Under the pieces are notes generated by a model, which saw only the letters and a program-made list of their open reading frames with translations, ran no database searches and had not been told where the DNA came from. DNA of 63,143 bases, the filler included, from Octopus bimaculoides (Eukaryota): the NCBI RefSeq assembly GCF_001194135.2. It is 4 parts of 4 records of this genome, joined end to end, with 100 filler letters (N's around TTAATTAATTAA, not from the genome) between each part and the next. Parts side by side here need not be neighbours in the genome. Positions count along the whole stretch, not along the records: positions 1 to 22,656 come from NC_069007.1; 3 more parts are not named here. The stretch is one strand, 5' to 3'. Each line of letters starts with the position of its first letter. The first letter of the stretch is position 1. The position numbers and the translations under genes were made by a program. Below are positions 1,102 through 30,708 of the stretch, one piece after another.

Positions 1102-1544
1102 AGCAATGTTAATTCTCTAAATGAAGTATTAACAGTAACTGCACGATAAAGTGTAGTATATTGCCACTTAAGTGTGGCTGACCCCTAGGGGTGGATGTTA
1201 CTGTTGCTTTTAGCCCCAGGAGGACATCTCCTCCAGCTGGCTTATCGACACACGACTGTGTCCTGTTTGCCAAGGGAAGTTATCCCTCTCACCTCGATCA
1301 GCAGCACGANNNNNNNNNNNNNNNNNNNNNNNNNNNNNNNNNNNNNNNNNNNNNNNNNNNNNNNNNNNNNNNNNNNNTCGGAGTGGCTGTGTGATAAGTA
1401 GCTTGCTTACCAACCACATGGTTCCGGGTTCAGTCCCACTGTGTAGCACCTTGGGCAAGTGTCTTCTACTGTAGCCTCGGGCTGATCAAAGCCTTGTGAG
1501 TGGATTTGGTAGACGGAAACTGAAAGAAGCCTGTCGTATATATG

Positions 1545-7410: not shown

Positions 7411-7939
7411 TGATTGTAACTAACTATGCATAGAGTGAAGAAGGATTTGTTGAATTACAAATGGTACAATATATGAGGTGTCGATGACATTGTGAAAGAT
7501 GTCGATGGAGAAAAGGAAACAAGCATAAATCTCAAGAACAGGTGTATTTAAAGGTATTGGGGTAAGTATTCTTTTGAACGAGAAGAAGAGAGGTTATGGG
7601 AAGATAGGACCAGAAGGTCAAAAGGAAAGAAATAAGAGTTGTGGGGATAGCTCATTGAAGTAGCAGAGTAAATGGGTGAAATATTGGAGTAAATGGAACT
7701 TTTGTCATCAGATGAAAGCATTTGAAGACACTGCCAAAGGCTTGAGCTCTGTGGAGTAAGGGGTTAACTAATGCTATAGGGGACTCTATGTGAGGAATAA
7801 ATAGTGCAATTCATCAGATGAGGAGACAAAACCAGAGTCTTTGCTGCATAAAAATCATAAGAATCAAAGACATTGCAGGACTGGGGTGGTAGTTCTAGTC
7901 TGAGGAGGGTGAGAGGGGAAAAGTCAACACGGAAGTGTG

Positions 7940-9020
7940 GTGCCGGCTGTGTGGTAAATAGCTTGCTTACCAACCACATGGTCCTGGGTGGCACTTTGGG
8001 CAAGTGGCACTTTGGGCAAGTGTCTTCTACTATAACCTCGGGTTGACCAAAGCCTTGTGAGTGGATTTGGTAGACGGAAACTGGAAGAAGCCCGTCGTAT
8101 ATGTATATATATATATATATATATATNNNNNNNNNNNNNNNNNNNNNNNNNNNNNNNNNNNNNNNNNNNNNNNNNNNNNNNNNNNNNNNNNNNNNNNNNN
8201 NNNNNNNNNNNNNNNNNNNNNNNNNNNNNNNNNNNNNNNNNNNNNNNNNNNNNNNNNNNNNNNNNNNNNNNNNNNNNNNNNNNNNNNNNNNNNNNNNNNN
8301 NNNNNNNNNNNNNNNNNNNNNNNNNNNNNNNNNNNNNNNNNNNNNNNNNNNNNNNNNNNNNNNNNNNNNNNNNNNNNNNNNNNNNNNNNNNNNNNNNNNN
8401 NNNNNNNNNNNNNNNNNNNNNNNNNNNNNNNNNNNNNNNNNNNNNNNNNNNNNNNNNNNNNNNNNNNNNNNNNNNNNNNNNNNNNNNNNNNNNNNNNNNN
8501 NNNNNNNNNNNNNNNNNNNNNNNNNNNNNNNNNNNNNNNNNNNNNNNNNNNNNNNNNNNNNNNNNNNNNNNNNNNNNNNNNNNNNNNNNNNNNNNNNNNN
8601 NNNNNNNNNNNNNNNNNNNNNNNNNNNNNNNNNNNNNNNNNNNNNNNNNNNNNNNNNNNNNNNNNNNNNNNNNNNNNNNNNNNNNNNNNNNNNNNNNNNN
8701 NNNNNNNNNNNNNNNNNNNNNNNNNNNNNNNNNNNNNNNNNNNGAGGCTCCAGCAGGAGATGGTGGCGAACCCTGCTGTACTCTTTCAACACAACTTTCT
8801 CTCATGTTTTCTTCCTGTTTCTGTTGTGCCTGTAATTCAAAGGGTCAGCTTTGTCACACTCTGTGTCACGCTGAATATCCCCCGAGAACTACGTTAAGGG
8901 TACACGTGTCTGTGGAGTGCTCAGCCACTTGCACGTTAATTTCACGAGCAGGCTGTTCCGTTGATCGGATCAACTGGAACCCTTGACGTCATAAGCAACG
9001 GACTGCCAACAACAACAATG
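7940..9020 (+). mobile_element. SINE A head (7940-8126) and 3' part of SINE B (8744-9020) flanking a gap
   Basis: Similarity to other copies. Confidence 0.85.
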
Positions 9021-9617: not shown

Positions 9618-10315
9618 GGCACAGGAGTGGCTGTGTGGTAAGTAGCTTGCTTACCAACCACATGGTTCCGGGTTCAGTCCCACTGTGTGGCACCTTGGGC
9701 AAGTGTCTTCTACTATAGCCTCGGGCCGACCAAAGCCTTGTGAGTGGATTTGGTAGACAGAAACTGAAAGAAGCCCATCGGTTAGGTGTCTGGAATGGGA
9801 CGGCTTACCTCATGGGCAAGTAGAAGCTCTTTAACCTTGGTTGGTGATCTACCTAGGAGAAGGAAATCTGCGAAATAAAACCTGAGGCCTTGGAAGTTAC
9901 TAATTTTGTCAATTCTCTTGTTATACCGATGAAAGTCTTCTTGGGCTAATAAGTGGGGGTAGTGCAGTGCAAGCTACACCCACTAAAAATTATTCATCTG
10001 CACAGGTACTTCCTGTACTTCAGATCTTGGTAAAATCATTCAATTGGTTGATTGGCAGAAGCCTAAAAAATGCACCTGTAACTTATGTATGTGTGTGTAT
10101 GTGTTTGTGTGTCTGAGTTTGTCCCCCCCACCATCACTTGACAACCAATGCTGGTGTGTTTATGTCCCCGTAACTTAGCGGTTCGGCAAAAGAGACCGAT
10201 AGAATAAGTACTAGGCTTACAAAGAATAAGTCCTGGGGTCGATTTGCTCGACTAAAGGCAGTGCTCCAGCATGGCCACAGTCAAATGACTAAAACAAAAG
10301 AGTAGAGTAAAGAGT
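9618..10315 (+). mobile_element. Full SINE A (head 9618-9780, tail 10070-10315) interrupted by a 290-bp insert resembling a LINE 5' UTR
   Basis: Head and GTAAAAGA-type tail both match other copies. The insert contains an RTE-5'UTR-like CTAGGAGAAGGAAA stretch (inference). Confidence 0.7.
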
Positions 10316-11305
10316 ATTATTCACTTTTAAATTGTTGCTTCAATTCAATCCCATGCCCTGCTATGTTAACATTTTACATAATTGCATAGAAGCAACAATG
10401 AAGCAAAAATGTCTTCCCAAGCAGAAGGTAAAGTTTCATTGATCAAAGAATTATTTTATAATTTTCCATCAATTATTATTAATCAGTAAGTCTATTTTTT
10501 TAAACTATATCTCGGCACTAAAATTATTCTTGACTCTCTTATTAAAGTAAAATTTAACATTAGATGTGTTGTTATACTTGAAATCATTTGGAAACACAGA
10601 ACCATTCTATATGACTTCCCCACATATATATATATATATATCTTTATTACTGGGCAATAAATAATGGAGAATGCGCAATCATTATCAATACCAAAAAACA
10701 AAGATTTAAAAAAAAGAACACTGTGACAAAGACGCAACATTGAAAAGAAAGAGGAAGAAGAATAGTTGTTGCAGTGGTGGTGGTCGTGTGGAGTAGAAAA
10801 GGGAAACAAAGAAAAAGAATATAAATGGGTTACTTTGAATATAAGAAACTAGTGTACTGAATTAATAATAATAATTATAATAAAACAGAATATTTAGCTT
10901 TATTCCTGCCAATGGTGTGAGAAGCAGAACAAAGAAGGAGGGCCAATATAAGATATCCGCCTATATTTGGCTGCTGAAATCAGCATCTTTTTACAAGCCA
11001 AGAGAAATGACCCGACAGGAACCTATGTTTGCACTAAATGAAATACTGTTGTATCAGCCAATAGAATCCAGTACAGGTGTCTACCGCTACAGCTAACCCA
11101 TCATGCTCTAAATTGTTATGGATCCTATTTCAATAAACCTTACCAATAATAAAAGAAATCATTTCAACTTAAGATTCTGAACCACTGACAAATAAAAGAT
11201 TTTGTCCGGCACTGCTTCTGACATTAGTGCTTCAAAACAGCACACTGTCAAAGCAGTTAAACTGCTGATCATCGGTTGGGGTAGAGATACAAAATTCTAT
11301 CCATC

Positions 11306-11385
11306 ATGGATGGAATGAAACTGCCCACACCTTTACTTTTATATCTGTTTTGTTTTCTTCACTATATATCCTGCGAACATCCCAG
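11306..11385 (+). CDS. Candidate coding exon 1 of a small secreted protein (signal peptide MDGMKLPTPLLLYLFCFLHYISC-EHP)
   Basis: In-frame upstream TAG (11282-11284), ATG at 11306, hydrophobic core ending in ISC, perfect donor CAG|GTAAGT, phase 2. Confidence 0.5.
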
Positions 11386-12153
11386 GTAAGTCAAAACACT
11401 CATAGATATTTCGAATTAACGACAAATTCTCAACTGAACATTTCATAAATTTTGTTTGAGAAAATGCTACGTCTCTGTTTTATATTGATTTCCATTTTCC
11501 TTCTTTCATTTTCCTTCTTTCATTAGTTTAAGATTTTATACAGTTTATATTGTTTATTATTACATAATTTACATTTAAATTATTTTAACAATGTTATAAA
11601 ATGGACAATTGGCAGTTATTAAAGAACCAACTTTGTAATTTTTTTTTTCTTTTTGCTCTCTTCATTTTGAGTTCTGAGTTCTACTCCTACCAAACTTAAT
11701 TTTACCTTCCTTCCTTTCAAGGATCAATAAACAAGGTTTCACTCCTCTACTGGAATAAATTCTTCCCTTTCTCCCAGTCTTTCTTTCTATTTGATGTCTT
11801 TCTCTCTGAAAAAATGTGGCTGTCACCAGATATCAGGAGGGAAGGGCTCCACCAGGTTAAAATATGCCCAAGACATGCTAAATGTCCTGACAACACTTCT
11901 TCAACTCCATCAAACAGTTGAAGATGAAATACAAGGCATATAGCTTTTATACAATTGCTTATCCATGTTGAATTACTCTACTCAGAATCTCTTCTTTGAT
12001 GTTCAACAGCCTCTAGTCAGTCTTCAACATTTTGTTTGATATCTTAATGGAACTTCTGCTATCACAAGTTCCATCACTTCTTATACATACATATATTTTT
12101 TGTATATATATACATATATATACACACACACACATATATATACATATATATAA

Positions 12154-12196
<43 letters not shown>

Positions 12197-12268
12197 CATA
12201 TATATAAACATACACACACACATACACATATATATACATGCATATACACACGTGCATGCACACATGCA

Positions 12269-13929
12269 CAGGGTGGGGAAGCAAAACTTTGCAAAATTGC
12301 TGTAACATTTGAAACTCATTGTGCATCAATAAGTTTAGTAATTCAAAAATAAGTGAATAACATTCCCATATAATTACAAAACAAATAATTTATTCTATGT
12401 GGATTCCATTGTTTGCAATTAAAGCCTCCACACAGCCCCAAAACCCTGCAGAACTCTTCACCACCAAATCACTGAACACCCTGGCCCACTCCTCATTGAT
12501 AGCAGCCTTCAGAGAGTTGATGTTGGAGTGGGAGGTTTTGTTGGTGGCATGCTCCAAAATGCCCCACATAACATAGTCCAGAGGGTTGAGATCTGGGCTG
12601 GAAGAGGGCCAGAAGTTCGCAGATGAGAAAGCAGGAAAACTGGATTTGCAGAAATTCTGTATCTTCTTGGTAGTATTGCTGGGAGCACCATCCTAGGTCC
12701 GCACATAGTTGCTCTCTGGATAGTTGACCTTGGTGGAGGCGCAATGGCCCAGTGGTTAGGGCAGTGGACTCGCGGTCATAGGATCGCGGTTTTGATTCCT
12801 AGACCGGGCGTTGTGAGTGTTTATTGAGTGAAAACACCTAAAGCTCCATGAGGCTCTGGCAGGAGATGGTGGCGAACCCTGCCGTACTCTTCCACCACAA
12901 CTTTCTCTCACTCTTACTTCCTGTTTCTGTTGTGCCTGTAATTCAAAGGGCCAGCCTTGTCACACTGTGTCACGCTGTCTATCCCCGAGAACTATGTTAA
13001 GGGTACACGTGTCTGTGGAGTGCTCAGCCACTTGCACGTTAATTTCACAAGCAGGCTGTTCCATTGATCGGATCAACTGGAACCCTCGACGTCGTAAGCG
13101 ACAGAGTGCCAACAAGTTGACCTTGAGCCATGGCAAAACATGGTAATTCATCATCATGTAGTAGGCATCAGCACCTATCTTTTCACCAGCCTTGTAGAAA
13201 TAGATAGGCATCTGTCCCCTACTGAAAGTCATGATCTAGGCTGGATGTTTTGTTCTGAAGGTGTCACTGACATCAGCTGTTGACTCTGCAATGTACTGGT
13301 TGTTTCTGTGGTTTACAACATCATCCACTGTGAAGATCTTGTCGGAGAAAATTTTCACAGTGGGGTCTTTCTTCTTGAAGTATGTGAGAACCTTTTTGCA
13401 CCTCTCCAGCTTGTATAGGTTCTGTCAGCAGGTGTCTCAGTATCCTTGTGTAAAACTTGAGACCAAAGTTATCATTCACAGCTATTCTGATGGTCTTGTG
13501 GGTACACTTCAAGTTCAGAAACCAGCTTCCTCGTGGATGTGGTTGGGTTTGTTGAAATTTTGGATTTGATGGTGTTGATGTTTTGATTCCACTTCTTGTT
13601 GGCCCCATCACTGTCAGACTTCTTCTCAATGCCATTGCCCACGTCCATTCTCTTCTTGATGTTATAAACTGTGTGTAAGAATGATCTGATTATGCTCGAA
13701 ATCCTCTTCAGATCGACTTGTGCACAAACCAAATCACATAGTCTTTGGCGTTTGTCTTCCTGTGCAGTCATATTCTCCAATATTCCTGCAAAAAGAGTTT
13801 ATTATTAGCTGACAATGTATTCATAAAGAAATAAATGTATTCATTGTTCTGCATTAGGTCTCATATCAGTTGATGTAGTGGTTGCTGAGAAATAGTGTAA
13901 CTTCTAATGCAAGTTTTGCTTCCCCACCC

Positions 13930-13931
<2 letters not shown>
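12269..13931 (-). mobile_element. Tc1/mariner DD37D (maT) transposon relic, full extent, with nested SINE B
   Basis: TIRs CAGGGTGGGGAAGCAAAACTT at both ends. Transposase N-terminus in ORF 13472-13780. Catalytic *DGAPSN...WPSSSPDLNPLDY has 37 residues between the last two Asp. Multiple stops and frameshifts. Confidence 0.9.
12733..13114 (+). mobile_element. SINE family B, full length
   Basis: 11-bp TSD AGTTGACCTTG (12722-12732 / 13115-13125). Confidence 0.9.
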
Positions 13932-13973
<42 letters not shown>

Positions 13974-15660
13974 TTATGAAGGGTATTGGACTCAACCAAA
14001 CCCAAAGATACAGGTAATACCGAGTAAGTGCTGTATACCAGCTAGTTTTGCCCCTTTCGTTGTATAAACATGAGTGGGGATTAAAACATAGGTCGTGTAT
14101 TAGCGTGTGTATGTATAAAGAGAGAAAAGGATAAAGAGAACAATGGCAAAGTTGGAAATATATTTTATGGATAGAGTCTAACTTTGCCATTGTTCTCTTT
14201 ATCCTTTTCTCTCTTTATGCATATATACATATATATATAAATTTAAGTCACAATATATAGATTCAAGTAATCTTGTAGTACTCATACAAAACATATAGAA
14301 TATATAGTATGATACAATATAGACTATATAGTATGATATAAGAGAAAAGGATGAGGTGTGTAAAAAGTCACAAATGACAGAGAAATAGATTGATCAAATT
14401 TTATTTAACAAAAAGAAAATTCTAATACCATGACAAATTGTTTCATAACTTAAAAACATGTAAATAATTTATATTATAATATTTAATAAAAAAAATAAAT
14501 TACTTACGTGCCTGCATTAATGCAAAAAATCCTTCAAAATAATGCAGAATTTAAGCTACATCCTCATGTGAAAGAAATCTTTGTTAAATAAGAGATTGTT
14601 GATGTATTGTTATATGATGAGGTCTTGAATAGGGAATAAAGGACCCTGACAAACTGATTGATTGATTAATCAAGTGATTGATTGCTTAATAAAATGATTA
14701 ATCAAATAATTAGTTAATTGATTAATACTTTACTAATTGACAAATATTTGGTAAAAGAAGTGAAATAGAACCAGTGCATGTGTTTATTGGCATAACCACC
14801 CTCCCTAAATACAACAATGCATGTCTCAATACATAAGATCACAGGAGGAATATTGCAAACCAAGTACAAAAAACCATGTACAAATATGTTTGTGATATAT
14901 TTGAACTATTAAAAGGCCTTTTCCTAGCAGTTTGTAGAGGAAAAAATTCTCGATAGCTGTTAATATACTAACAATCATTTCAGGGCACCTTCTGTGGACC
15001 ACTGAATTCATTTCAAGCTGATCAGCTATCATCAGCACTGGTTACTAAACGAGATCAGCCATAAAAAACTTCAATGAAAATGGTCTTTTTACAGATCGAA
15101 TAAAATCCAAACAAATTCAAAACTAATCTAAATGTTAATCTAATGAGACTTAGACTTTCAATTTTCAACATCTTACAAAAATATTCCACTCCTTTAATTT
15201 CTCTACATCCCAACTCCTTACCTTATAAAACTTATTCAAAAAACCTTGTATATATATATCTGCCTTTAAATGAAGGGTGAAAATTCTGTATTGTAGATAA
15301 ATATAAATAAGACAAACCAGCATTGAAGCACTTAAGCAATACCTCTTCTTCTTCTTTTTGCATCATCATCATCACCCTTATCATGTCTGTTTTCTATGCT
15401 GGCATGGGTTGAATGGTTTGACCAGAGCTGGTGAGCAGGAGAGGTACATCAGGTTCCAGTCTGATTTGGCTTGTTTTTTACAGCTGGATGTCCTTCTGAA
15501 CACCAACCATTTTACAGTGTCTACTGGGTGCTTTTAATGTGGCACTGACAGGATTTGCCAATGTGTAATGTTGTTCACATTAGGATGTAATTAGTATGAA
15601 AAGTGAAAGAATAAAAGTGTTAAGATATAATTAGAATTAAAAGTGAAAAAATAAAATTGA

Positions 15661-16530
15661 GACTGAGGACTGGTGAAACCGGATGGCAACACCAGGCTCC
15701 AATCTAATTTGGCAGAGTTTCTACAGCTGGATGCCCTTCCTAACGCCAACCACTCAGAGAGTGTAGTGGGTGTTTTTAAGTGTCACCCGCACGAAAACGG
15801 CCACGCTCGAAATGGTGTCTTTTATGTGCCACCCACACAAGAGCCAGTCCAGGGGCACTGGCAACGATCTCACTCGAAAATCCTACGGGAGCCAGTCAGG
15901 CGGTACTGGCAACGGCCACACTCGAAATGNNNNNNNNNNNNNNNNNNNNNNNNNNNNNNNNNNNNNNNNNNNNNNNNNNNNNNNNNNNNNNNNNNNNNNN
16001 NNNNNNNNNNNNNNNNNNNNNNNNNNNNNNNNNNNNNNNNNNNNTTTAATCCAAATGAAAAAAAAAAAGAAAATTATATGTTGAAACTCACGTGGTCCGA
16101 TACTATTACCATGTAAAATTTGACTTGATTTGGTTGAGCCATTTGAGAATGCATTGAGAGCAGACAGACAGACAGAAAAAGAATTTTATATATATATATT
16201 TATATAAATAAGAATAAGATCATTATTTAAAATACCAATCTTATCAGTTGGCCAGCCTGGGAATAAAAACCTCAAAGGTAATAAATATTATAAAAATTAT
16301 AATTTAGGGTATCTAAGAGATACCACCATGCTAGATATAGCAGCCAAAACTTGACTCTAAAACCACATTAAATGTGGTTTTAGAGTCAAGTTTTGGCTGC
16401 TATATCTAGCATGGTGCTAACGCTTAGATACCCTTAATTATAATTTTAATAATATTTATATATATATATAGATTAGACAATATGTCATGAGAACTATACA
16501 AATATATGTGTGTGTGCACGTGTATATATA

Positions 16531-16611
<81 letters not shown>

Positions 16612-16872
16612 TTGCCAGTGCCCCTGGACTGGCTTGTGCGGGTGGCACATAAAAGACACCATTTCAAGCGTGGCCGTTTTCGTGTGGGTGACACGTAAAA
16701 GCACCCACTACACTCTCTGAGTGGTTGGCGTTAGGAAGGGCATCCAGCTGTAGAAACTCTGCCAAATTAGATTGGAGCCTGGTGTTGCCATCCGGTTTCA
16801 CCAGTCCTCAGTCAAATCGTCCAACCCTTGCTAGCATGGAAAGTGGACGTTAAACGATGATGATGATGATGA
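15661..16872. repeat. Inverted pair of near-identical SINE D copies (15661-15868 and 16608-16813)
   Basis: Arms are reverse complements and share diagnostic variants (GGTGAAACCGGATGGCAACACC, CTAATTTGGC). Confidence 0.85.
16281..16459. repeat. Palindrome/foldback: perfect 46-bp arms (16324-16369 / 16371-16416) with imperfect 36-bp outer arms
   Basis: CACCATGCTAGATATAGCAGCCAAAACTTGACTCTAAAACCACATT-A-exact reverse complement. Confidence 0.95.
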
Positions 16873-17153
16873 TATATATACACACACACACATATAAGGA
16901 TTATTAGTAAGAAAATCATTGATAGAGTACTACCTGCACTTAAGTTTAAAGTTAAAACAGCAAGGGATAATCCACAGCAATTTTTTGTCCACCTCTGGAG
17001 TGAAGGATAAATAAATCTACCTTGCTTGCTACATTCAGATTGTAAACCACAACATGCCTTATCTCTTAGTCATCACCCTCACTGGTGCTCATGGCCAGGG
17101 CTATAAATCTATCTACATCCACCACATTCTACATCCACCACAATGCCCATGAA

Positions 17154-17364
17154 CCCTTTAAGATTACTCTGTCAGATGAAATGCTTATATATTCACATTG
17201 TTTTGAATTAATCATAGCTTATCTTGTAGCTTTGAGATTTTGATATGATTGTTTATCTTTAAAATGACATTGTAGGGTAGGTGTAAGAGGCTAGATCTGA
17301 TCAGCTTGGACATAAAACAAGTGGAATATTTGGGCTGAATATTGCCAGTTTAAACACTGAGGGG
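17154..17364 (-). mobile_element. piggyBac-like MITE (same family as 22176-22392)
   Basis: CCCTTTA...GAGGGG-TTAA ends. Reverse-complement similarity to 22176-22392. Confidence 0.6.
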
Positions 17365-18221
17365 TTAAGGGAGTTTAATTCTGCTTCAAGCCATTCAATA
17401 GCACCCTAATTTACCCATTTTTAATGAAGGAAAGAATAAATAAAATTCTAAATCAAGATAAGTATTGTTTATAAAATGAGAAAAAGAAACAGACCCAAAA
17501 ATTTAATTTGCTATTAACACACTTTTAAAATAAACACTAAAAATGATTTACAGTAAAAATCAAGTTCACTTGATTTCATTACAAACTTTACTTGTCACAA
17601 ACTTTTTATTTTTACTGGTCATTACAAACTTTTTACTTTTCACAAACTCTATAAAATGCATGTGTAAATACTTAAAACATTTAGATATTTACTTACCCCT
17701 TTTACAAATCCTACTCTGGTTTTTCCTTTAAAAGAATCGATAAAGTATGGATCTTTCTAGAATTTAAAAAAGCTATTTTTTCTAAGTTTATATATTTTTT
17801 AATGTTAAGCAATTTGTGTGATAATCAGCACAAGAAACGATTTAAATGTTAAACACCTTTGAAATATGAGCTATGATTACACTTTGGAATTGATTTTTGC
17901 ATCCAGAAATGGGTAATATTAAGGTTAAACTTTGACCTTCACTTATCCACAGATGCACTCATACTCACACTTTTGTGCAATTTCTTGTTAGAGGTAAGTG
18001 TTATACGATAAAGAGTAAGCTCTGAGTGAGGCTTTCATTCTTAGTGTGACCAATCACACCTCAGACATGTTGTTCATGACTTAGAAAATGGCATGAATGT
18101 CATATCTTTCCTTTTCATTCTCTTTAATTATATCTTATCTTTTACCTGTTTCAAACTAAGACACCACCTTGAGGGGTTTTAGTCAACAAATCTGTTAACC
18201 TAATGAAAATTCCATCTAAAT

Positions 18222-18609
18222 TGTTCTTGTTGGCACTCCGTTGTTTACGACATCGAGGGTTCCAGTTGATCCTATCAACGGAACAGCCTGCTCGTGAAAT
18301 TAACGTGCAAGTGGCCGAGCACTCCACAGACACGTGTGCCCTTAACGTAGTTCTCGGGGATATTCAGCGTGACACAGTGTGACAAGGCTGACCCTTTGAA
18401 TTACAGGCACAACAGAAACAGGAAGAAAGAGTGAGAGAAAGTTGTGGTGGAAGAGTACAGCAGGGTTCGCCACCATCCCCTACCGGAGCCTCATGGAGCT
18501 TTAGGTGTTTTCGCTCAATAAACACTCACAACGCCCGGTCTGGGAATCGAAATCGCGATCCTATGACTGCGAGTCCGCTGCCCTAACCACTGGGCCATTG
18601 CACCTCCAC
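18222..18609 (-). mobile_element. SINE family B, full length
   Basis: 11-bp TSD TCCATCTAAAT (18211-18221 / 18610-18620). Confidence 0.9.
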
Positions 18610-18980
18610 TCCATCTAAATACAACCGGGATAATCCACAGCAATATTTTGTCCACCTCTGGAGTGAAGGATAAATAAATCTAGCTTGTTTGCTACATTCA
18701 GATTGTAAACCACAACATGCCTTATCTCTTAGTCATCACCCTCACTGGTGCTCATGGCCAGGACTATAAATCTATCATTCAGATCAAGAAAAATCAAATT
18801 TACCTTTAAATCCAGGGCCTTTCCGAATCAGCACCTTTATGTCACTTGATTTGATTTGATCAGGGAAGTGAATGCCATGCAGTCATTCAGAAAAGGGACA
18901 AATGATTTCATATGGGAAATCCTGGTCTGCCTAATTAGTACCACATCCAGGCATAGTAACCTGAAGATGTTGAGCAACTA

Positions 18981-19196
18981 CGAGGGGATGCTGAAAAGTT
19001 CCTGGCTTTGGGTAAAAGAAAATACAGGAAAATCAGTTGATTATGATTTTATTCAACACATTTCCCTCTCAGATTCACACACTTGTTGCAGCAGTCCTTC
19101 AGTTTTTCTAAGCCCTGTAAAAGAACCCAGAAGGTTGGGCTTCCAGCCAGGCTTTCGCAATAGTCTTAAAGCGAGGAACTATTCAGCACCCTCTTG
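18981..19196. mobile_element. Mariner-derived MITE, complete
   Basis: TA-CGAGGGGATGCTGAAAAGTTCCT...AGGAACTATTCAGCACCCTCTTG-TA: TIRs with TA TSD. Confidence 0.85.
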
Positions 19197-19309
19197 TAAA
19201 CCTGTGTCATTTGTGACTTCCTTTAATCACGATTCACAATAACCATGCTTTTAATGTAATGCCACACAATAACCATTTGTATGTTCTGGTAGAAATCTGT
19301 TTTATTTAG

Positions 19310-20420
19310 ATAAAGTTTATAGCTTTGTTTGGAAGGACAATCTATTACCAGAGGAGCATAAGAGATGCAGAAAGGGATCAAGGGGAACTGGCTAATGTTG
19401 ATAGCTTGATCTTAGATGAGGTATGAATAAGAAAGAACAATTTAGCTTTTGGATGGGAAAACTAAATGGAAGTTGAGAACACTTGAACACTTGGGGTCAA
19501 TGACAAGATTAAATGTTTGAAGGACTGTTACACATTTTTTCCTGTCTTCTTCTATGATCAAAGACCTTCCAGTTATGGCAATTCTATTGAAACTTGCTAT
19601 TATGTGTCTTATCCCCAAGAAGATAACCATTCCAGAATTGCTGAGATGGATCTCTCAGAAAAAGAGATGAGGGGGAAGAGAGAGTGGGTAAGAGAGAGAC
19701 AGAGAAAAAGAAGAAAGGAAAGAGGGTGAGAGAGAAACGGAGAAGGAAGAAAACAATAAGAATTTTGGTAAGGGTAGGAGATAGCTCAAGAGTGCACTAT
19801 TTGTGGGTGGTAAAAAAACCTCCTGATTGTCTGTAATTTGTATGTTATGTTTGACAAAACTTTTACAATTTTAGGCAAATGTGTCAAAATACACAAACCA
19901 CCAGAAACTACAATAATCCATGTGGAGAGATACATCTGTTACAAATTGGAAAACCTCTGCAAACATTAGAGTTCATTTTCTTAATCTTTTGAAATCAAAT
20001 CTAATTTTTCTTCTTTTCATTTAAATCAATAATCTACAATAGCCTCCAAGAGTCTCTGACTTAGTCATTATTTATATATTTTATACCAAAATTTTAGCGC
20101 AATAACTTTTATGGTTATAAGTTTCCAACTATCCAGTAATAAATTCCTTTCTTAGTGCAGACTAAATATCTCAAGGGACTGGGTTCATAAAGCTGCAATT
20201 TCCCAACCAATTTTTATACAATATGCTGATCTACATCAATGATAAAATAAACACACACAATGTAATATGCATGATTGTCTTGGGCCCAGTAACATTAAAA
20301 AACTTCACCTGTTGGCTGGTATTACTCCATCTTATATAAGAAGGGATATTCCTGGAAAAATTGAAAACAAAATCAGATGTGTGATGAAAGATATCCATTA
20401 TTTGAATAACAAATATGAAA
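19310..20420 (+). pseudogene. Ancient LINE remnant (endonuclease-like start, RTE-like C-terminus)
   Basis: ELANVDSLILDEV resembles the EN ExxxDxxxLxE motif. LHLLAGITPSYIRR (about 20305-20345) resembles the RTE-group C-terminal L.GI.PP.IRR motif. Many stops. Confidence 0.4.
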
Positions 20421-20828
20421 AAGATTAACCCTTTAGCCATGTCTGGTTTGTGGAAGGACAGCTTTCAAATGATATTTATCTCACCCAGGGGCAATGTTTT
20501 TTGTACTACACTACATACCAATTGGCATGAAGTCATTCACCTACACTCCAACATCTGCCCCACAGATGTAGTGTCTCTGCTTTCTTCCTTCCCCTTCTCC
20601 TGCAAACTTAATGTTTTATACAAAACCTATAAACTTAAACAAAACCTATTCCCTTTGATCATTGTTCTGTATTGACTACATTTAACACAAAAGAATAAAT
20701 CACTCAGAGGACTTTATTCTCCAAAATATGCTAATTTTCAAGACCATTTGTATACAATATTGTACATCTACTTAGAGATTCTCTCAGCACTACTTCAGCA
20801 AGTAGAGTGAAGTCTATGTTTCACTGGG

Positions 20829-21210
20829 TTGTTGTTGGCACTCCGTCGCTTACGACGTCAAGGGTTCCAGTTGATCCGATCAACGGAACATCCTGCTCGT
20901 GAAATTAACGTGCAAGTGGCCGAGCACTGCACAGACACGTGTACCCTTATCGTAGTTCTCGGGGATAATCAGCGTGACACAGTGTGACGAGGCTGGCTCT
21001 TTGAATTACAGGCACAACAGAAACAGGAAGAAAGAGAGAAAGATGTAGTGGAAGAGTACAGCAGGGTTTGCCACCATCCCATGCCAGAGCCTCGTGGAGC
21101 TTTAGATGTTTTCACTCAATAAACACTCACAACGCCTGGTCTGGGAATCGAAACCGCGATCCTATGACTGCGAGTCTGCTGCACTAACCACTGGACCATT
21201 GCGCCTCCAC
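20829..21210 (-). mobile_element. SINE family B, full length
   Basis: 11-bp TSD GTTTCACTGGG (20818-20828 / 21211-21221). Confidence 0.9.
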
Positions 21211-21407
21211 GTTTCACTGGGAAGGTCAAATAAAACTGAAACATCTCCAGAGTTATTTCCCATACTTGTTAAATAATTAAAATATTATTAGTCATTGATT
21301 TGCGCCATATTTTCCTCTCACATAAATATTTCCACTTAAAGTTTGTTTATATGTTCTCTGTATTAAATATGTTAATATTAACTTAATTACAATTAATTAT
21401 TTTTCAG

Positions 21408-21590
21408 TTTTGATGAACATTTCTGCAAGACTTCAAGAGTACAGGAGAAATACAAAAATGCCACTTGTAATCAGAAAACATTTTACAAGATGATCCTCCA
21501 AAGTTATATGCCAGTTTTGAATCATACAAACTCCAATGAACATAATCTACCATTTTTAAATAACCCACACAAAATGTGTTTGTACAAAAA
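21408..21590 (+). CDS. Candidate coding exon 2 (FDEHFCKTSRVQEKYKNATCNQKTFYKMILQSYMPVLNHTNSNEHNLPFLNNPHKMCLYK)
   Basis: Acceptor TTATTTTTCAG|, donor AAA|GTAAGT, 183 nt, symmetric phase 2-2. Only this frame is open, in AT-rich DNA. Confidence 0.6.
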
Positions 21591-21668
21591 GTAAGTGGTC
21601 CCTAAATTGTGTTTTATTTCTGTATGTTTTTTTCTCTATTGTCTCTGAATAATTTTTTAATCTTGTAG

Positions 21669-21711
21669 CTGGGAGGAAAGGCAGAATGCTATCAGCAAAC
21701 TGGAGACTTGA
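21669..21711 (+). CDS. Candidate terminal coding exon 3 (NWEERQNAISKLET*)
   Basis: Follows a 78-nt pyrimidine-rich GT-AG intron (21591-21668). Phase matches exon 2. TGA at 21709-21711. Confidence 0.5.
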
Positions 21712-22175
21712 ACTAAATTTTTGCAACAAAATGGATACCACTAAAGGCATTCAAGATGACCGGTAGAGGTGTTGAGTCAGGTTGTAAATGAAGGTAACAA
21801 TCCAAGAAGGCTATCGCAGGATTTGATCTCAGAACACAACGAGCTGTACAAATCTAACAAGGCATCAGGTTCAAGCATTATTTTATTGACCTTGAAATGA
21901 CGAATAGCAAAGATGTCCATGTCAGGATTTGAACTTGCTGATGCACTTCTCAAAAGAACTTTAAGATAAACCATTTCTGAAAAAATATTCAAGCAAAAAT
22001 TCAAGACAACTGCTACTGCAATCATAATGGCTGTCTCCTACAGCATCTCCTTTTCCAAATATCAAACTAGCTACGTTTTAAATGCTTGCCCATTAAATGC
22101 AGACAAAGGGGGAATTAGCTCAAATCTTCCTGAATTAAGGGAAACAGGAAGACTTCTTAAATCTGCTTTCCTTAA

Positions 22176-22392
22176 CCCTTTAGAACTTAAACTGGCCATA
22201 TCCTGCCATTTATCTGCCTGTTCTATGTTCAAACTGGCCAGATCCGGCCTCTCACACTAACCCTACATCATTCTGAAAATTAACAGTTACCTCATCAAAA
22301 TCTCATAGCTACAAGATAATACATAATTAATTCAAGACAATGTGAATTAAAAAAAGCATTAATTTGGGCAGAATAATGTGAATGCTAAAGGG
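22176..22392 (+). mobile_element. piggyBac-like MITE
   Basis: TTAA-CCCTTTAG...CTAAAGGG-TTAA. Confidence 0.8.
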
Positions 22393-22428
22393 TTAAACAA
22401 TATTAATGAACAAAATTAAAACTTTTAC

Positions 22429-22625
22429 TCTTTTACTCTTTTACTTGTTTCAGTCATTTGACTGTGGCCATGCTGGAGCACCGCATTCAGTCGAGCAAAT
22501 CGACCCTAGGACTTATTCTTTGTAAGCCTATTACTTATTCTATCGGTTTCTTTTGCTGAACCGCTAAGTTACAGGGATGTAAAACACACCAGCATCGGTT
22601 GTCAAGCGATGTTCGGAGGACAAAC
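22429..22625 (-). mobile_element. SINE A 3' half
   Basis: Reverse complement of the tail at 10100-10315. Further copies at 51082-51310 and 55510-55921 (the latter full length). Confidence 0.85.
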
Positions 22626-22756
22626 ACATACACATACATACATATATATATATATANNNNNNNNNNNNNNNNNNNNNNNNNNNNNNNNNNNNNNNNNNNN
22701 TTAATTAATTAANNNNNNNNNNNNNNNNNNNNNNNNNNNNNNNNNNNNNNNNNNNN

Positions 22757-25870: not shown

Positions 25871-26553
25871 ATTTTAAAGATCTAAAAACAAGGAAATTAA
25901 CTTCAATGACATTAGCTTATCAAAATCTCAACACTATACCTCGGACTAAAAGTCTCAATTATGTTGGTGTATTTGCAAGTTGTCTCCCTTCAAATAGTCG
26001 AAAAGTGCAAGATTACAGTATACTATAATAGCAGTGAAATATATGGGGATGACTGGAGTAATGTTTGCTGCCTCTGATAATTATAATCAGTAAATAGTAG
26101 ATTTTGTTACTCTCTGCGTTCCAAATTCAAATCACACTGAAGTCAAATTTGCCCTTCATCCTTTCAGAATAGATAAAAAAACCACCCCAAAGCCCAGTAC
26201 CAATTCAGGGAGGTATATTGACTGAAATTGTAAGAATTTGCACAAGATTCCATGTGGAAATTGTCCCGGTTCCTTAGTTCTGAGTTCAAATCATGAAATG
26301 GTCTATTTGGGATAAACATCTCTACCTGTTACCGAGGGTGCTCTTAGTGGTGTCCACTCTGATGAAAGCATTCGGGTACGGTCTCTGGTTTGAGGTTAGC
26401 TTCCTCTCTTCCCCCTACCAGCCTCGGTGGACACAAGGAGGCTCTAAGGGTTATGGGTTATCCTGACTAAAGGATAAAAATATAGTCTGTTTGTAGGAAT
26501 GTAAGTATGTAATGATGTTCTTTTGTAGGCATCAATAGAAGAGGGAAAGAGAG

Positions 26554-27327: not shown

Positions 27328-28880
27328 TACTATGCATAAAATATTACTAAGGAAATCTTTAATAAAAAAGGTTTAAGCTCGAATACAATCATGCTTTTGA
27401 TATAATACACACGTATCCCTCTCCCACGCACGCACATGCCCACAAATGCATATTCTCATTAAGTGCAGTCTTGCAAGCCATGTCAAGTAGAAAGGCTAAG
27501 TGAATCATCATCTGTTTCCATTTAAACAAACTTATAAAGATTCGGTAGAATTAAGATTTATTTTATATGTGATGTATTTGTGCTGATTTTATTTTAAGTT
27601 TCTACTTTGCTATTAGTAATCTTTTTTTATGTTGAATTAAATACAAATTTGGAAGTCTATCAACAAGTGTTTTTCTATCCAATTTTATAGTGTGTACTGT
27701 ATTATGAGTTGCGAAGGTGTTTTGTAAACGCATAATCAACTGACGACTTCTGTTCTATGCAATAGTTTGAATCATGAATTTTATAACTTTCATGTTTATA
27801 TTGGAATTTATATATTACATTCATTACTTCCGTTGCCTGTAAGTTATTAGGTTGTGGTTCCGTGTTGATAAGAAAGTTTATTTTGGAATGTTAAATAACA
27901 ATAGGAAAATACGAACAATCCTTTATAATAAAAAAAAAGATCAAACTTGAACATAGCCTTTAGTCAGTATGAAGCAATCTGGCACGACCGTTTTGACGCA
28001 GCTTATTCGACGTCGCTCATTCGATGCTATATATTTAACATCAGATGTTTTAATATTTTTCTCGTTCTATTCCACCCTCTGTCTCTCCCCCTCACTCTAT
28101 GTGTGTGTCTGAGTGTGAGGATATTTCTCTATGTGTATGAGGAGAGAGAAAGCGTTAATGTCAATTAATAAATTTTAATGCGTCTCCCATCCCTCTCTCA
28201 CACATACTCTTTATATCTGTATGTGTATACTTCTACACACACACACGCGCGCGCGCGCGCGCGCATTAATGGATCTGTTAGAGCGTTGGATCGAATGCTT
28301 TGCAGTATCAGTTTCGGCTCTTTGTGTTGTAAATGCAATGCTTGCAGTCACACTGACACCAGGCTGTGTATTGGGCCTTGCCATTTTCTTGGATATTATA
28401 GGTGGCGTAGGGATCTTACAATCCAAATGCAGAAATCCAACCCCTCCACAGACTTTAAATGATGGTGTACAAAATGTTACAAATAATAAATTTTTAATCT
28501 ATTTAAACTGGGCAGACAAAGACAAAATCCTAACAGTATTTGTTAGCGACTCTCAAAGCCTAAGGGAGATAATTTCAATAAATTAAAAATTAAATTCTCA
28601 AGTTAAGTTTCATGCTTAGGGAAAGAACAAACTGTTCATTATAAGGTTACCTCTATAGATTTCCTGTTATAGACTTCGTAGTACATTATGGTTGCATAAC
28701 GAAATACCGTGTGCTTACAAGTCATTAAACTGATCTTTGTTTTGAAGTAAGGTACAAATAAAGACTTATGTTTCTGTCTATTTGATTCCATCAGCATAGA
28801 ACACCCTACTCAGGCTTGAAGATCCGTGATAGTTTTTTCGTATATAATTAAAGCGTTGTCTATACATACACACAAATTGC

Positions 28881-29806: not shown

Positions 29807-29965
29807 AAAAAAAAAAAAAGATTCCCCATGTGCATTTGGTACTCCGGTTGACGGATGCTTGCGTACAAATTCCTTTCGATAGAAAAACTTCAGGGATACC
29901 TATAGAATTCGAACCCAAATCTCCTCTAAACATGACAAGCGTTCTACCATTGGACCAAGGCAACC
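29806..29965 (-). mobile_element. tRNA-derived Pol III unit (SINE-like head) ending in a long T run
   Basis: A box TGGTCCAATGG (29957-29947), B box GGTTCGAATTC (29915-29905), 31-nt spacing, T run at about 29819-29807. Confidence 0.6.
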
Positions 29966-30708
29966 CTTCGAATTCTTTTGTTCATTAAAGAGAATTTATT
30001 CTTCTAGCCAGAGTTGGATTTTGTTGAAGTCATAAAAGAATGTGAAATAATAATTTTTTTAACCCAATATTTGCACACTACTATTTTTAGCTTTATCTGC
30101 TTCGAGATGTACTATTCTGAGAAAGGATCATTTTACATTCTCTTAAAGTTTAATAAATTCTTGTGAAGTCAACAATATTCACACACACACAGCACGCACG
30201 CCCACATGCATGCGTGCACACATGCACACACACACACACACACACACACATACAGCACGCACGCCCACATGCATGCGTGCGCGCACACACATACACACAC
30301 ACACACACACACACCTTTTCTGTTTACATCCTCCCTCAAATGCTATAGCATATTGATATCTCTAATTCTTGTTCTCGTTTTCCGAGAATTCCATACAGTA
30401 ATTCACATCCTGCATTTACTTTTTAGAATCACTGCCTTGTGATTCTTGTAGATAGTGAAAATACACACATCGCCCTACATAAATATTATTAGAACACTAT
30501 TGATTAATAAATGAATACGTATAAAGCTTAATTATGTTTTTATCCCTTTAATTTTACTTCTGCCTTCGAACAGTCTCAACGTCAACATTCCATTATCTAT
30601 GAGAAACCTTCCAGAGTTGAATGGTATTTGTTCCTTTTTCTCTTCATTTTGAGTTCTAACGAACCATAATGTTACTCAACTTTATAAATTGTTTATAGTT
30701 TTCTGTAT

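What the first reader, a model, noticed from the sequence alone, without database searches (positions are those of the whole stretch)
11306..21711. Hidden three-exon gene for an unrecognised 101-aa secreted protein, invisible in the ORF track
Seen in sequence: exon 1 (11306-11385) has an upstream in-frame stop, a hydrophobic leader and a CAG|GTAAGT donor in phase 2. Exon 2 (21408-21590) has good splice sites and a single open frame, phase 2-2. A 78-nt intron leads to exon 3 with a stop. Joined product: MDGMKLPTPLLLYLFCFLHYISCEHPSFDEHFCKTSRVQEKYKNATCNQKTFYKMILQSYMPVLNHTNSNEHNLPFLNNPHKMCLYKNWEERQNAISKLET. It has three Cys after the leader and two N-glycosylation sequons (NAT, NHT). Inference: a lineage-restricted secreted peptide (cytokine-like, gland or venom product). 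I recognise no family, and extra exons in the 10-kb first intron cannot be excluded.
Basis: partly seen in the sequence, partly recalled or inferred. Interest (0 to 1): 0.7.

Follow-up and report, generated by a model that had tools for sequence, protein, structure and literature searches.

The report
Split 5′ end of octopus VWD gene
The two first "exons" are real and highly transcribed, but they are the signal-peptide end of a roughly 860-residue secreted von Willebrand-D-domain glycoprotein that an assembly gap cut into two gene models, not a stand-alone 101-residue secreted peptide.

Summary
The sequence facts reproduce: the three segments join to the stated 101-aa ORF. That ORF is identical to RefSeq "uncharacterized protein LOC128250969 [Octopus bimaculoides]", so it is not hidden.

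RNA evidence confirms only part of it. One 2,990-nt cDNA contig (run X1, depth 740) starts at 11197, splices 11385|21408 exactly and uses the exon-2 donor at 21590. It then continues into G-AATATAGTGATACAAGAAGAAAAATGTTGT, not into the claimed exon 3, which has depth 0 and no 21590|21669 joint.

That continuation is the sequence directly after the 2,477-N assembly gap that ends the window piece. From there the frame runs through consensus-spliced exons encoding an EGF module and the start of a VWD domain. These belong to the neighbouring 772-aa VWD-C8-TIL-VWD-C8 model.

Related species show purifying selection on exons 1-2 (pN/pS about 0.1). The claimed exon 3 has only non-synonymous changes, and its stop lies in a repeat.

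Verdict: an ordinary split-gene annotation artefact. The real gene is a secreted VWD glycoprotein whose residues 24-87 (the part encoded by exons 1-2) have no detectable homologue.

The parts
11197..11305 (+). 5' untranslated region. The cDNA 5' end is at 11197.
   Evidence: The X1 contig begins here, directly behind Illumina adapter sequence. The stretch contains no ATG.
11306..11385 (+). Coding exon 1: start codon and signal-peptide-like leader (MDGMKLPTPLLLYLFCFLHYISC|EH...), ending in phase 2 at CAG|GTAAGT.
   Evidence: Sequence. RNA contig at depth 740. The 11-residue Kyte-Doolittle mean peaks at 1.9 over residues 10-20. Related species show 0-1 changes in 80 nt, against about 6% in the flanks.
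11386..21407 (+). Intron 1, 10,022 nt as assembled. It is full of SINE-like and microsatellite repeats and contains the 115-N gap at 15930-16044.
   Evidence: The cDNA joins 11385 directly to 21408. The gap sits in a very high-copy repeat and is not spanned by DNA contigs. Repeats.
21408..21590 (+). Coding exon 2 (phase 2 to 2). It encodes residues 27-88 of the N-terminal module, with Cys33/47/84 and the NAT/NHT sequons.
   Evidence: RNA contig at depth 740. No indels in two related species, with mostly third-position changes; pN/pS is about 0.10 for exons 1+2.
21591..22656 (+). First 1,066 nt of intron 2. The intron runs on into the 2,477-N assembly gap that ends the window piece. The true exon 3 begins inside that gap.
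   Evidence: No gene-derived RNA over 21592-22183 in X1. The signal from 22184 onward comes from reads and contigs that fit only partly, i.e. from repeat copies elsewhere. The continuation after exon 2 is absent from the window but matches L001 23829 onward, right after the gap.
21669..21711 (+). Claimed (and RefSeq) terminal exon 3 with its stop codon. It is not supported and is probably a model-closing artefact.
   Evidence: Depth 0 and no 21590|21669 joint in X1. Organism B has 3 changes in 43 nt, all non-synonymous. The stop lies in the repeat at 21691-21758. It is no better than chance.
21756..21762 (+). The 7-nt 'ATGACCG' start mini-exon of the downstream 772-aa model. It is probably an artefact that supplies a start codon to the decapitated gene.
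   Evidence: The model starts at L001 20451, which is window 21756. The sequence is ATGACCG|GTAGAG. There is no RNA over it in X1, and it lies in the repeat. That it joins to ...TGATACAAG after the gap in the true frame is my inference.

Best explanation
Window 11197-21590 holds the first two exons of a single, larger Octopus bimaculoides gene. They carry the 5'UTR, start codon, signal peptide and the first roughly 65 residues of a Cys-containing N-terminal module. The remaining exons lie beyond the window.

Intron 2 runs into a 2.5-kb assembly gap that swallowed the acceptor and the first 4 nt of the true exon 3. Automatic annotation therefore split the gene in two. One model is LOC128250969, which is exons 1-2 closed by the nearest frame-closing pseudo-exon and gives 101 aa. 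The other is a downstream 772-aa model that is given a 7-nt ATG mini-exon.

The real mRNA is about 2.96 kb and encodes about 860 aa. The order is: signal peptide, N-terminal module ending in ...EEKCCSGWSGHKC, one EGF-like domain, an unassigned 8-Cys segment, then VWD-C8-TIL-VWD-C8.

Inferred function: a secreted, N-glycosylated, disulfide-rich extracellular protein. Its paired D assemblies would mediate disulfide-linked self-assembly or binding in a mucus, gel or matrix-type secretion. It is made abundantly in one tissue or stage and not in the other sampled RNA libraries.

Shown: exons 1-2, their junction, use of the exon-2 donor, the in-frame continuation into the post-gap exon, and the EGF and VWD signatures.

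Inferred: that the same contig runs through all exons of the 772-aa model (from length arithmetic), secretion, and the function.
For: (1). One X1 contig of 2,990 nt at depth 740 runs: adapter, 11197-11385, 21408-21590, then G+AATATAGTGATACAAGAAGAAAAATGTTGT.

(2). The 27 nt directly after the gap (L001 23829 onward) are identical to that continuation. The exon ends at C|GTAAGT.

(3). Exons 3-6 in L001 have consensus acceptors and GTAAGT or GTCAGT donors. Together with exons 1-2 they give an uninterrupted 261-aa frame.

(4). The VWD start scores 24.3 bits against a cutoff of 22.9.

(5). EGF_2 scores 22.0 bits against a cutoff of 22.1. WIF-1 EGF repeats match at E = 4e-11. The fibrillin-1 FUN/EGF1 boundary aligns to KCCSGWSGHKC...

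(6). The neighbouring model starts 45 nt after the 101-aa stop. It is 772 aa with precomputed Pfam hits VWD, C8, TIL, VWD, C8.

(7) Arithmetic. 26 adapter + 189 + 183 + 2,592 = 2,990 nt. The downstream CDS of 2,320 nt gives 2,583 nt = 860 codons plus a stop, in frame, and leaves 272 nt of 3'UTR.

(8). pN/pS is about 0.10 on exons 1+2, there are no indels, and exon 1 is nearly invariant.

(9) The inferred N-terminus of the downstream model (MTVIQEEKCC...) has no leader and starts in the middle of a module. Exons 1-2 supply the leader.
Against: - Only one RNA run expresses the gene, and it is available only as assembled contigs. These can hide rare isoforms and can in principle be chimeric.
Continuity beyond the first 30 nt of exon 3 therefore rests on reading frame, splice sites and contig length.
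- I never saw the 772-aa sequence. I have only its coordinates and its Pfam list, and two word-index searches meant to retrieve it returned nothing.
- RefSeq's reason for choosing the 21669 exon is unknown, and it might rest on reads I cannot see.
- No signal-peptide predictor was available.
- The tissue of X1 is coded, so the functional setting is unknown.
Confidence: 0.85

Rival explanations
1. This is an independent three-exon gene whose main product is a 101-aa secreted peptide, or at least a genuine alternative short isoform that uses 21669-21711 as its terminal exon.
For: The ORF, the splice-site consensus and the 78-nt intron exist. RefSeq carries the identical protein. The frame and the stop appear to be preserved in organism B. 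Contigs cannot exclude a rare isoform (caveat).
Against: - At depth 740 the only assembled transcript bypasses this exon. Depth over 21669-21711 is 0 and there is no 78-nt joint.
- The stop sits in a dispersed repeat.
- All 3 interspecies changes are non-synonymous.
- Frame-closing exons arise trivially here.
- The 101-aa product has no Pfam family and no confident fold; mean pLDDT is 61.7, and this is inconclusive.
- It would end inside a Cys module that exon 3 completes.
Confidence: 0.08
2. Two separate genes exist. The X1 contig is then either a read-through or conjoined transcript, or an assembler chimera between the small gene and the downstream VWD gene.
For: RefSeq annotates two genes. 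De Bruijn contigs can join transcripts that share k-mers.
Against: - The join falls exactly at the exon-2 donor, onto the next downstream exon on the same strand.
- It is in frame and continues a Cys-rich module.
- The downstream model's own start exon has no RNA support and is 7 nt inside a repeat.
- Without exons 1-2 an extracellular VWD protein would lack a leader.
- The contig length equals 5'UTR plus the merged CDS plus a short 3'UTR.
Confidence: 0.05
3. The exons are transcribed but not translated into a functional protein. This would be a lineage-specific non-coding or decaying transcript.
For: There is no detectable homologue of the exon 1-2 peptide. Expression was seen in a single run only.
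Against: pN/pS is about 0.10 and there are no indels across species. The long frame stays intact through recognisable EGF and VWD domains. Expression is very high.
Confidence: 0.02

Closest known systems
RefSeq LOC128250969, 'uncharacterized protein' of Octopus bimaculoides (101 aa)
   Same: It lies at the same place on CM046627.1.
   Different: The transcript evidence here shows that its last 14 residues and its stop are not used. It is the N-terminal fragment of the neighbouring gene.
VWD-C8-TIL 'D assembly' proteins: the von Willebrand factor D1-D2 propeptide region, the N-termini of gel-forming mucins, IgGFc-binding protein, zonadhesin and alpha-tectorin (general knowledge of these families)
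   Same: A secreted Cys-rich protein with the tandem VWD-C8-TIL-VWD-C8 order and a VWD start motif, TFDGSYYNFVGNCSY. It probably works the same way, through disulfide-mediated assembly or binding outside the cell.
   Different: It is short (about 860 aa) with only two D assemblies. The Pfam list shows no PTS/mucin, CTCK, VWA, ZP or MAM domains. It has a distinctive N-terminal module plus one EGF ahead of the first VWD.
EMI domain / fibrillin FUN domain followed by EGF (EMILINs, multimerin, the SCO-spondin N-terminus, the fibrillin-1 N-terminus)
   Same: The module ends in CC-x-G-W-x-G-x-x-C and is followed at once by an EGF-like domain of the C-x-P-x-C-x-N-G-G-x-C type. The fibrillin-1 FUN/EGF1 boundary and the WIF-1 and HHIP EGFs align there.
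   Different: Pfam EMI is not detected even at E <= 10. The exon 1-2 encoded part (residues 24-87) matches nothing in PDB or in 1.84 billion representatives. Its Cys spacing differs from EMI as I recall it, which is a lead from memory only. SCO-spondin is several thousand residues long with LDLRA and TSP1 repeats, and none are listed here.

Membership tests
VWD-C8-TIL secreted glycoproteins (VWF/mucin-type D assemblies) | At least one von Willebrand factor type D domain (PF00094) | tested here: met
   In the reconstructed partial protein, residues 211-240 match VWD profile positions 1-30 at 24.3 bits (cutoff 22.9). The downstream product lists VWD twice among its precomputed Pfam hits.
VWD-C8-TIL secreted glycoproteins (VWF/mucin-type D assemblies) | C8 and TIL modules following the VWD domain | tested here: met
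   The precomputed, unmarked Pfam hits on the 772-aa product are VWD, C8, TIL, VWD, C8. I could not retrieve the sequence itself to re-scan it.
VWD-C8-TIL secreted glycoproteins (VWF/mucin-type D assemblies) | N-terminal signal peptide on the same polypeptide | tested here: inconclusive
   The leader MDGMKLPTPLLLYLFCFLHYISC has a basic n-region and a hydrophobic core with a Kyte-Doolittle mean of 1.9. It is joined in one cDNA to exon 3. No SignalP-type predictor was available.
VWD-C8-TIL secreted glycoproteins (VWF/mucin-type D assemblies) | Exons 1-2 and the VWD exons are on one mRNA | tested here: inconclusive
   This is shown for exon 2 into the first 30 nt of exon 3.
Small stand-alone secreted peptide (cytokine-, gland- or venom-like orphan) | The mature mRNA ends the ORF after about 100 codons (exon 2 spliced to 21669-21711) | tested here: not met
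   There is no depth and no joint at 21590|21669 in the only expressing run. The transcript is about 3 kb and continues in frame.
EMI domain (PF07546) | A match to the family profile | tested here: not met
   There is no EMI hit at E <= 1 on the 261-aa construct, nor at E <= 10 on the isolated module. Only the terminal CCxGWxGxxC motif resembles it.
EGF-like domain | A six-Cys EGF profile match | tested here: met
   WIF-1 EGF repeats match at E = 4.3e-11, and HHIP, fibrillin-1 and Delta-like EGFs also match. Pfam EGF_2 scores 22.0 bits against a cutoff of 22.1, which is borderline.
Gel-forming mucin / SCO-spondin | PTS repeats and CTCK for a mucin; LDLRA and TSP1 repeats and a size above 4,000 aa for SCO-spondin | tested here: not met
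   The product is about 860 aa, and its Pfam list holds only VWD, C8 and TIL. PTS regions would not show in Pfam, but the length leaves little room for them.

The most novel reading that the evidence does not exclude
The roughly 85-residue N-terminal module (residues 24-108) may be an Octopus-lineage invention, or an extremely diverged EMI/FUN-type domain, grafted onto a VWD scaffold. Its exon 1-2 encoded part has no detectable relative in 1.84 billion representative proteins, in PDB or in Pfam, yet it is under purifying selection. It could give this protein a lineage-specific binding or assembly role in a specialised secretion. A weaker variant is that the short 101-aa form exists as a minor alternative isoform that releases this module alone.
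Probability: 0.15. Interest if true: 0.35.

Novelty: new member of a known kind. Interest (0 to 1): 0.15.

Why it matters
The main value is as a correction. A RefSeq "uncharacterized 101-aa protein" of the reference octopus genome is a gap-induced fragment, and its neighbour is a decapitated VWD gene with an invented start. Merging them gives a complete secreted VWD-C8-TIL glycoprotein. Such split models inflate counts of "orphan secreted peptides" in cephalopod genomes and mislead venom and peptide mining. Biologically the gene is an ordinary member of a large extracellular family. Only its unrecognised, conserved N-terminal module and its very restricted, very high expression are mildly interesting.

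Tried and rejected
- Searching the window and L001 for the 30-nt continuation of the cDNA gave 0 hits. The first bases lie in the gap. The ORF list and direct reading then located the rest at L001 23829.
- Two word-index homology searches meant to fetch the 772-aa neighbour and its orthologues returned nothing. I therefore never saw that protein's sequence.
- The exhaustive HMMER search with P0001 returned only the query itself.
- The EMI-domain idea came from the CCxGW motif and is not supported by Pfam. The idea that exon 5 encodes a TB domain also has no Pfam hit.
- AlphaFold of the 101-aa product as a single sequence gave mean pLDDT 61.7 and a generic all-helix model. This is inconclusive, so I ran no fold search.
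- RNA runs X4-X6 (raw reads) do not express the gene. Their reads in the window come from repeat copies elsewhere, so they could not test the junctions.
- I tried to show DNA continuity across the intron-1 gap. The region is a repeat with word depth in the millions, and no contig spans it.
- Rfam found nothing, and there are no long ORFs.
- The literature search found no paper on this gene, only general context on octopus mucus proteomes.


Full report
**1. The observation**

The coordinates and sequence features are as described. The ATG at 11306 lies in a good context (A at -3, G at +4), with in-frame stops upstream. Exon 1 ends at CAG|GTAAGT (11385). Exon 2 (21408-21590) lies between tttttcag| and |GTAAGT.

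The leader is hydrophobic, with an 11-residue Kyte-Doolittle mean of up to 1.9 over residues 10-20. The 5'UTR contains no ATG.

Sequence pattern alone is weak evidence here. The AT-rich window (37% GC) contains 17 open AG..GTRAG intervals of 150-400 nt by chance. Any acceptor after exon 2 closes the frame after a median of 8 codons. The claimed exon 3 is simply the first acceptor with a pyrimidine tract.

**2. It is not hidden**

The 101-aa product is identical to NCBI "uncharacterized protein LOC128250969 [Octopus bimaculoides]". It lies on chromosome record CM046627.1 of GCA_001194135.2. The window equals locus L001 plus 1305, with no mismatch over 21,351 nt.

**3. Transcript evidence**

Among the indexed RNA runs only X1 (organism A) holds the exons. 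X1 contains one 2,990-nt contig at word depth 740. Its layout is:
- record 1-26: Illumina adapter
- record 27-215: window 11197-11385
- record 216-398: window 21408-21590

The loose-end sequences show the 11385|21408 junction from both sides. Behind 11385 the contig reads TTTTGATGAACATTTCTGC..., and before 21405 it reads ...CTATATATCCTGCGAACATCC. Exons 1 and 2 and their junction are therefore real. No extra exon from the 10-kb intron is used.

After exon 2 the contig does not enter 21669-21711. It continues G+AATATAGTGATACAAGAAGAAAAATGTTGT. Depth over the claimed exon 3 is 0. No 78-nt joint is reported, although both sides were in the laid stretch. Three 2026 raw-read RNA runs of the same species show no expression of the gene at all, so expression is restricted.

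**4. Where the transcript goes**

The continuation is absent from the window. The window piece ends at 22656 because a 2,477-N assembly gap follows (L001 21352-23828). The first bases after that gap are ATAGTGATACAAGAAGAAAAATGTTGTTCTGGTTGGTCCGGACACAAATGCAATGAAC|GTAAGT. Their first 27 nt are identical to the cDNA continuation. So the true exon 3 straddles the gap edge, and its acceptor and first 4 nt (GAAT) are unsequenced.

In the phase left by exon 2 it reads K-NIVIQEEKCCSGWSGHKCNE. Three further exons in L001 keep the frame open to 261 aa. They are 26200-26304, 28459-28623 and 29895-30082. Each has a Y-rich CAG acceptor and a GTAAGT or GTCAGT donor.

That sequence contains several recognisable elements:
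- An EGF-like domain. WIF-1 EGF repeats match at E = 4e-11, and Pfam EGF_2 scores 22.0 bits against a cutoff of 22.1.
- An unassigned 8-Cys segment.
- The start of a VWD domain, at 24.3 bits against a cutoff of 22.9.

The collection's gene table shows a second model starting 45 nt after the 101-aa stop (window 21756). Its product is 772 aa, with Pfam VWD, C8, TIL, VWD, C8, and it runs off the locus. Its start is the 7-nt ATGACCG|GTAGAG. Joined to the AG at L001 23831-23832 this would read MTVIQEEKCC..., which is the true frame. This last join is my inference.

The length arithmetic fits one mRNA. 2,990 = 26 + 189 + 183 + 2,592 nt. The downstream CDS of 8 + 2,312 nt gives a total CDS of 2,583 nt, which is 860 aa plus a stop, in frame. 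That leaves a 272-nt 3'UTR.

**5. Conservation**

DNA contigs of two related species (organisms B and C) cover the exons.
- Exon 1 shows 1 synonymous change in one species and 0 in the other, out of 80 nt. Its flanks show about 6% substitutions plus indels.
- Exon 2 shows 7 changes in 183 nt and 8 in 156 nt, with no indels, mostly at third codon positions.
- Nei-Gojobori for exons 1+2 against organism B gives pS 0.116 and pN 0.012, a ratio of 0.10.
- The claimed exon 3 has 3 changes in 43 nt, all non-synonymous (pN 0.094). That is similar to neutral divergence.
- The claimed stop codon, and the downstream model's ATG mini-exon, lie in a segment (21691-21758) with 10-20 times single-copy depth. 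That segment is a dispersed repeat.

The numbers are small and the two species are not independent.

**6. The assembly gap inside the finding (15930-16044)**

This gap lies in intron 1, next to a repeat with word depth in the millions. No DNA contig spans it, so physical continuity could not be shown. It is irrelevant to the reading frame, because the cDNA splices 11385 to 21408. The gap that matters is the one after 22656.

**7. What the N-terminus is**

The exon 1-2 peptide alone has no Pfam family. It has no hit other than itself among 1.84 billion representative proteins. PDB sequences do not match its first 72 mature residues.

With exon 3 it ends in CCSGWSGHKC followed by an EGF. This resembles the end of EMI or fibrillin FUN domains, and fibrillin-1's YCCPGWK...-EGF1 aligns there. 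Pfam EMI is not detected, so I do not file it as EMI.

AlphaFold on the 101-aa form gave a low-confidence generic helix model (pLDDT 61.7). This is inconclusive.

**8. Interpretation**

This is one gene for a secreted glycoprotein of about 860 aa. The order is signal peptide, novel or diverged N-terminal module, EGF, Cys-rich segment, then VWD-C8-TIL-VWD-C8. By analogy with VWF and mucin D assemblies (established family knowledge), it most likely forms disulfide-linked assemblies, or binds partners, in an extracellular secretion or matrix. It is made at high level in one tissue or stage.

Octopus mucus proteomes do contain mucins and SCO-spondin-like proteins (PMC11431876). Nothing ties this particular gene to mucus.

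The "101-aa secreted orphan" is a gap-induced annotation fragment. The rivals are a genuine short isoform, a conjoined transcript or assembler chimera, and a non-coding transcript. All three are disfavoured, for the reasons given under each.

**9. Verdict**

Novelty is low. This is a new, mis-split member of the VWD-C8-TIL family. Interest is about 0.15.

Noticed in passing
window 15654-15930: A repeat of extreme copy number. DNA word depth reaches about 4 million in X2, and it is also abundant in the RNA run X1. It abuts the intron-1 assembly gap, and many internal-deletion variants appear among its copies. It is probably a major octopus SINE.
   Followed up: partly
window 1310-1377, 8127-8743, 22657 onward; flanks 1407-1703, 7764-8126, 22417-22656: Every assembly gap is flanked by (TA)n or (TATG)n microsatellite tails of one SINE-like repeat family. 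For example, 22417-22644 is 86% identical to 10098-10319. The gaps therefore look like systematic assembly failures at these elements.
   Followed up: partly
window 21691-21758: A short segment with 10-20 times single-copy depth in three species' DNA. No second copy is found in this window. It provides both the stop codon of the 101-aa model and the ATG of the downstream model.
   Followed up: partly
window 10600-10641 and 11631-11657: RNA reads in X4-X6 join 10641 to 11631, skipping 989 nt that include exon 1. The ends are non-canonical (CT..AA), there are only 2 start positions, and each side anchors by only about 20-40 nt. All of these reads fit only partly, so they probably come from a repeat-containing transcript elsewhere.
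   Followed up: no
window 22184-22400: Two-stranded RNA signal in all RNA runs, with 'opposite strands' joints (22213/22381) and many partly fitting reads. The segment 22170-22360 has an inverted, 75%-identical copy at 17180-17370. These are repeat-derived transcripts and are not part of the gene.
   Followed up: no
window 12103-12270 and 16523-16609: A TA/CA-rich tandem array with a 42-nt period (about 4 copies) and a (TA)43 microsatellite, both inside intron 1.
   Followed up: no
L001 28459-28623 (beyond the window): Exon 5 encodes an 8-Cys segment, FCFIEPSCYGAEYVCGKSMTFKECCSKNLTGSWGIPGIKCTPC, with a CC...G.WG....C..C pattern reminiscent of TB domains. It has no Pfam hit at E <= 10.
   Followed up: partly
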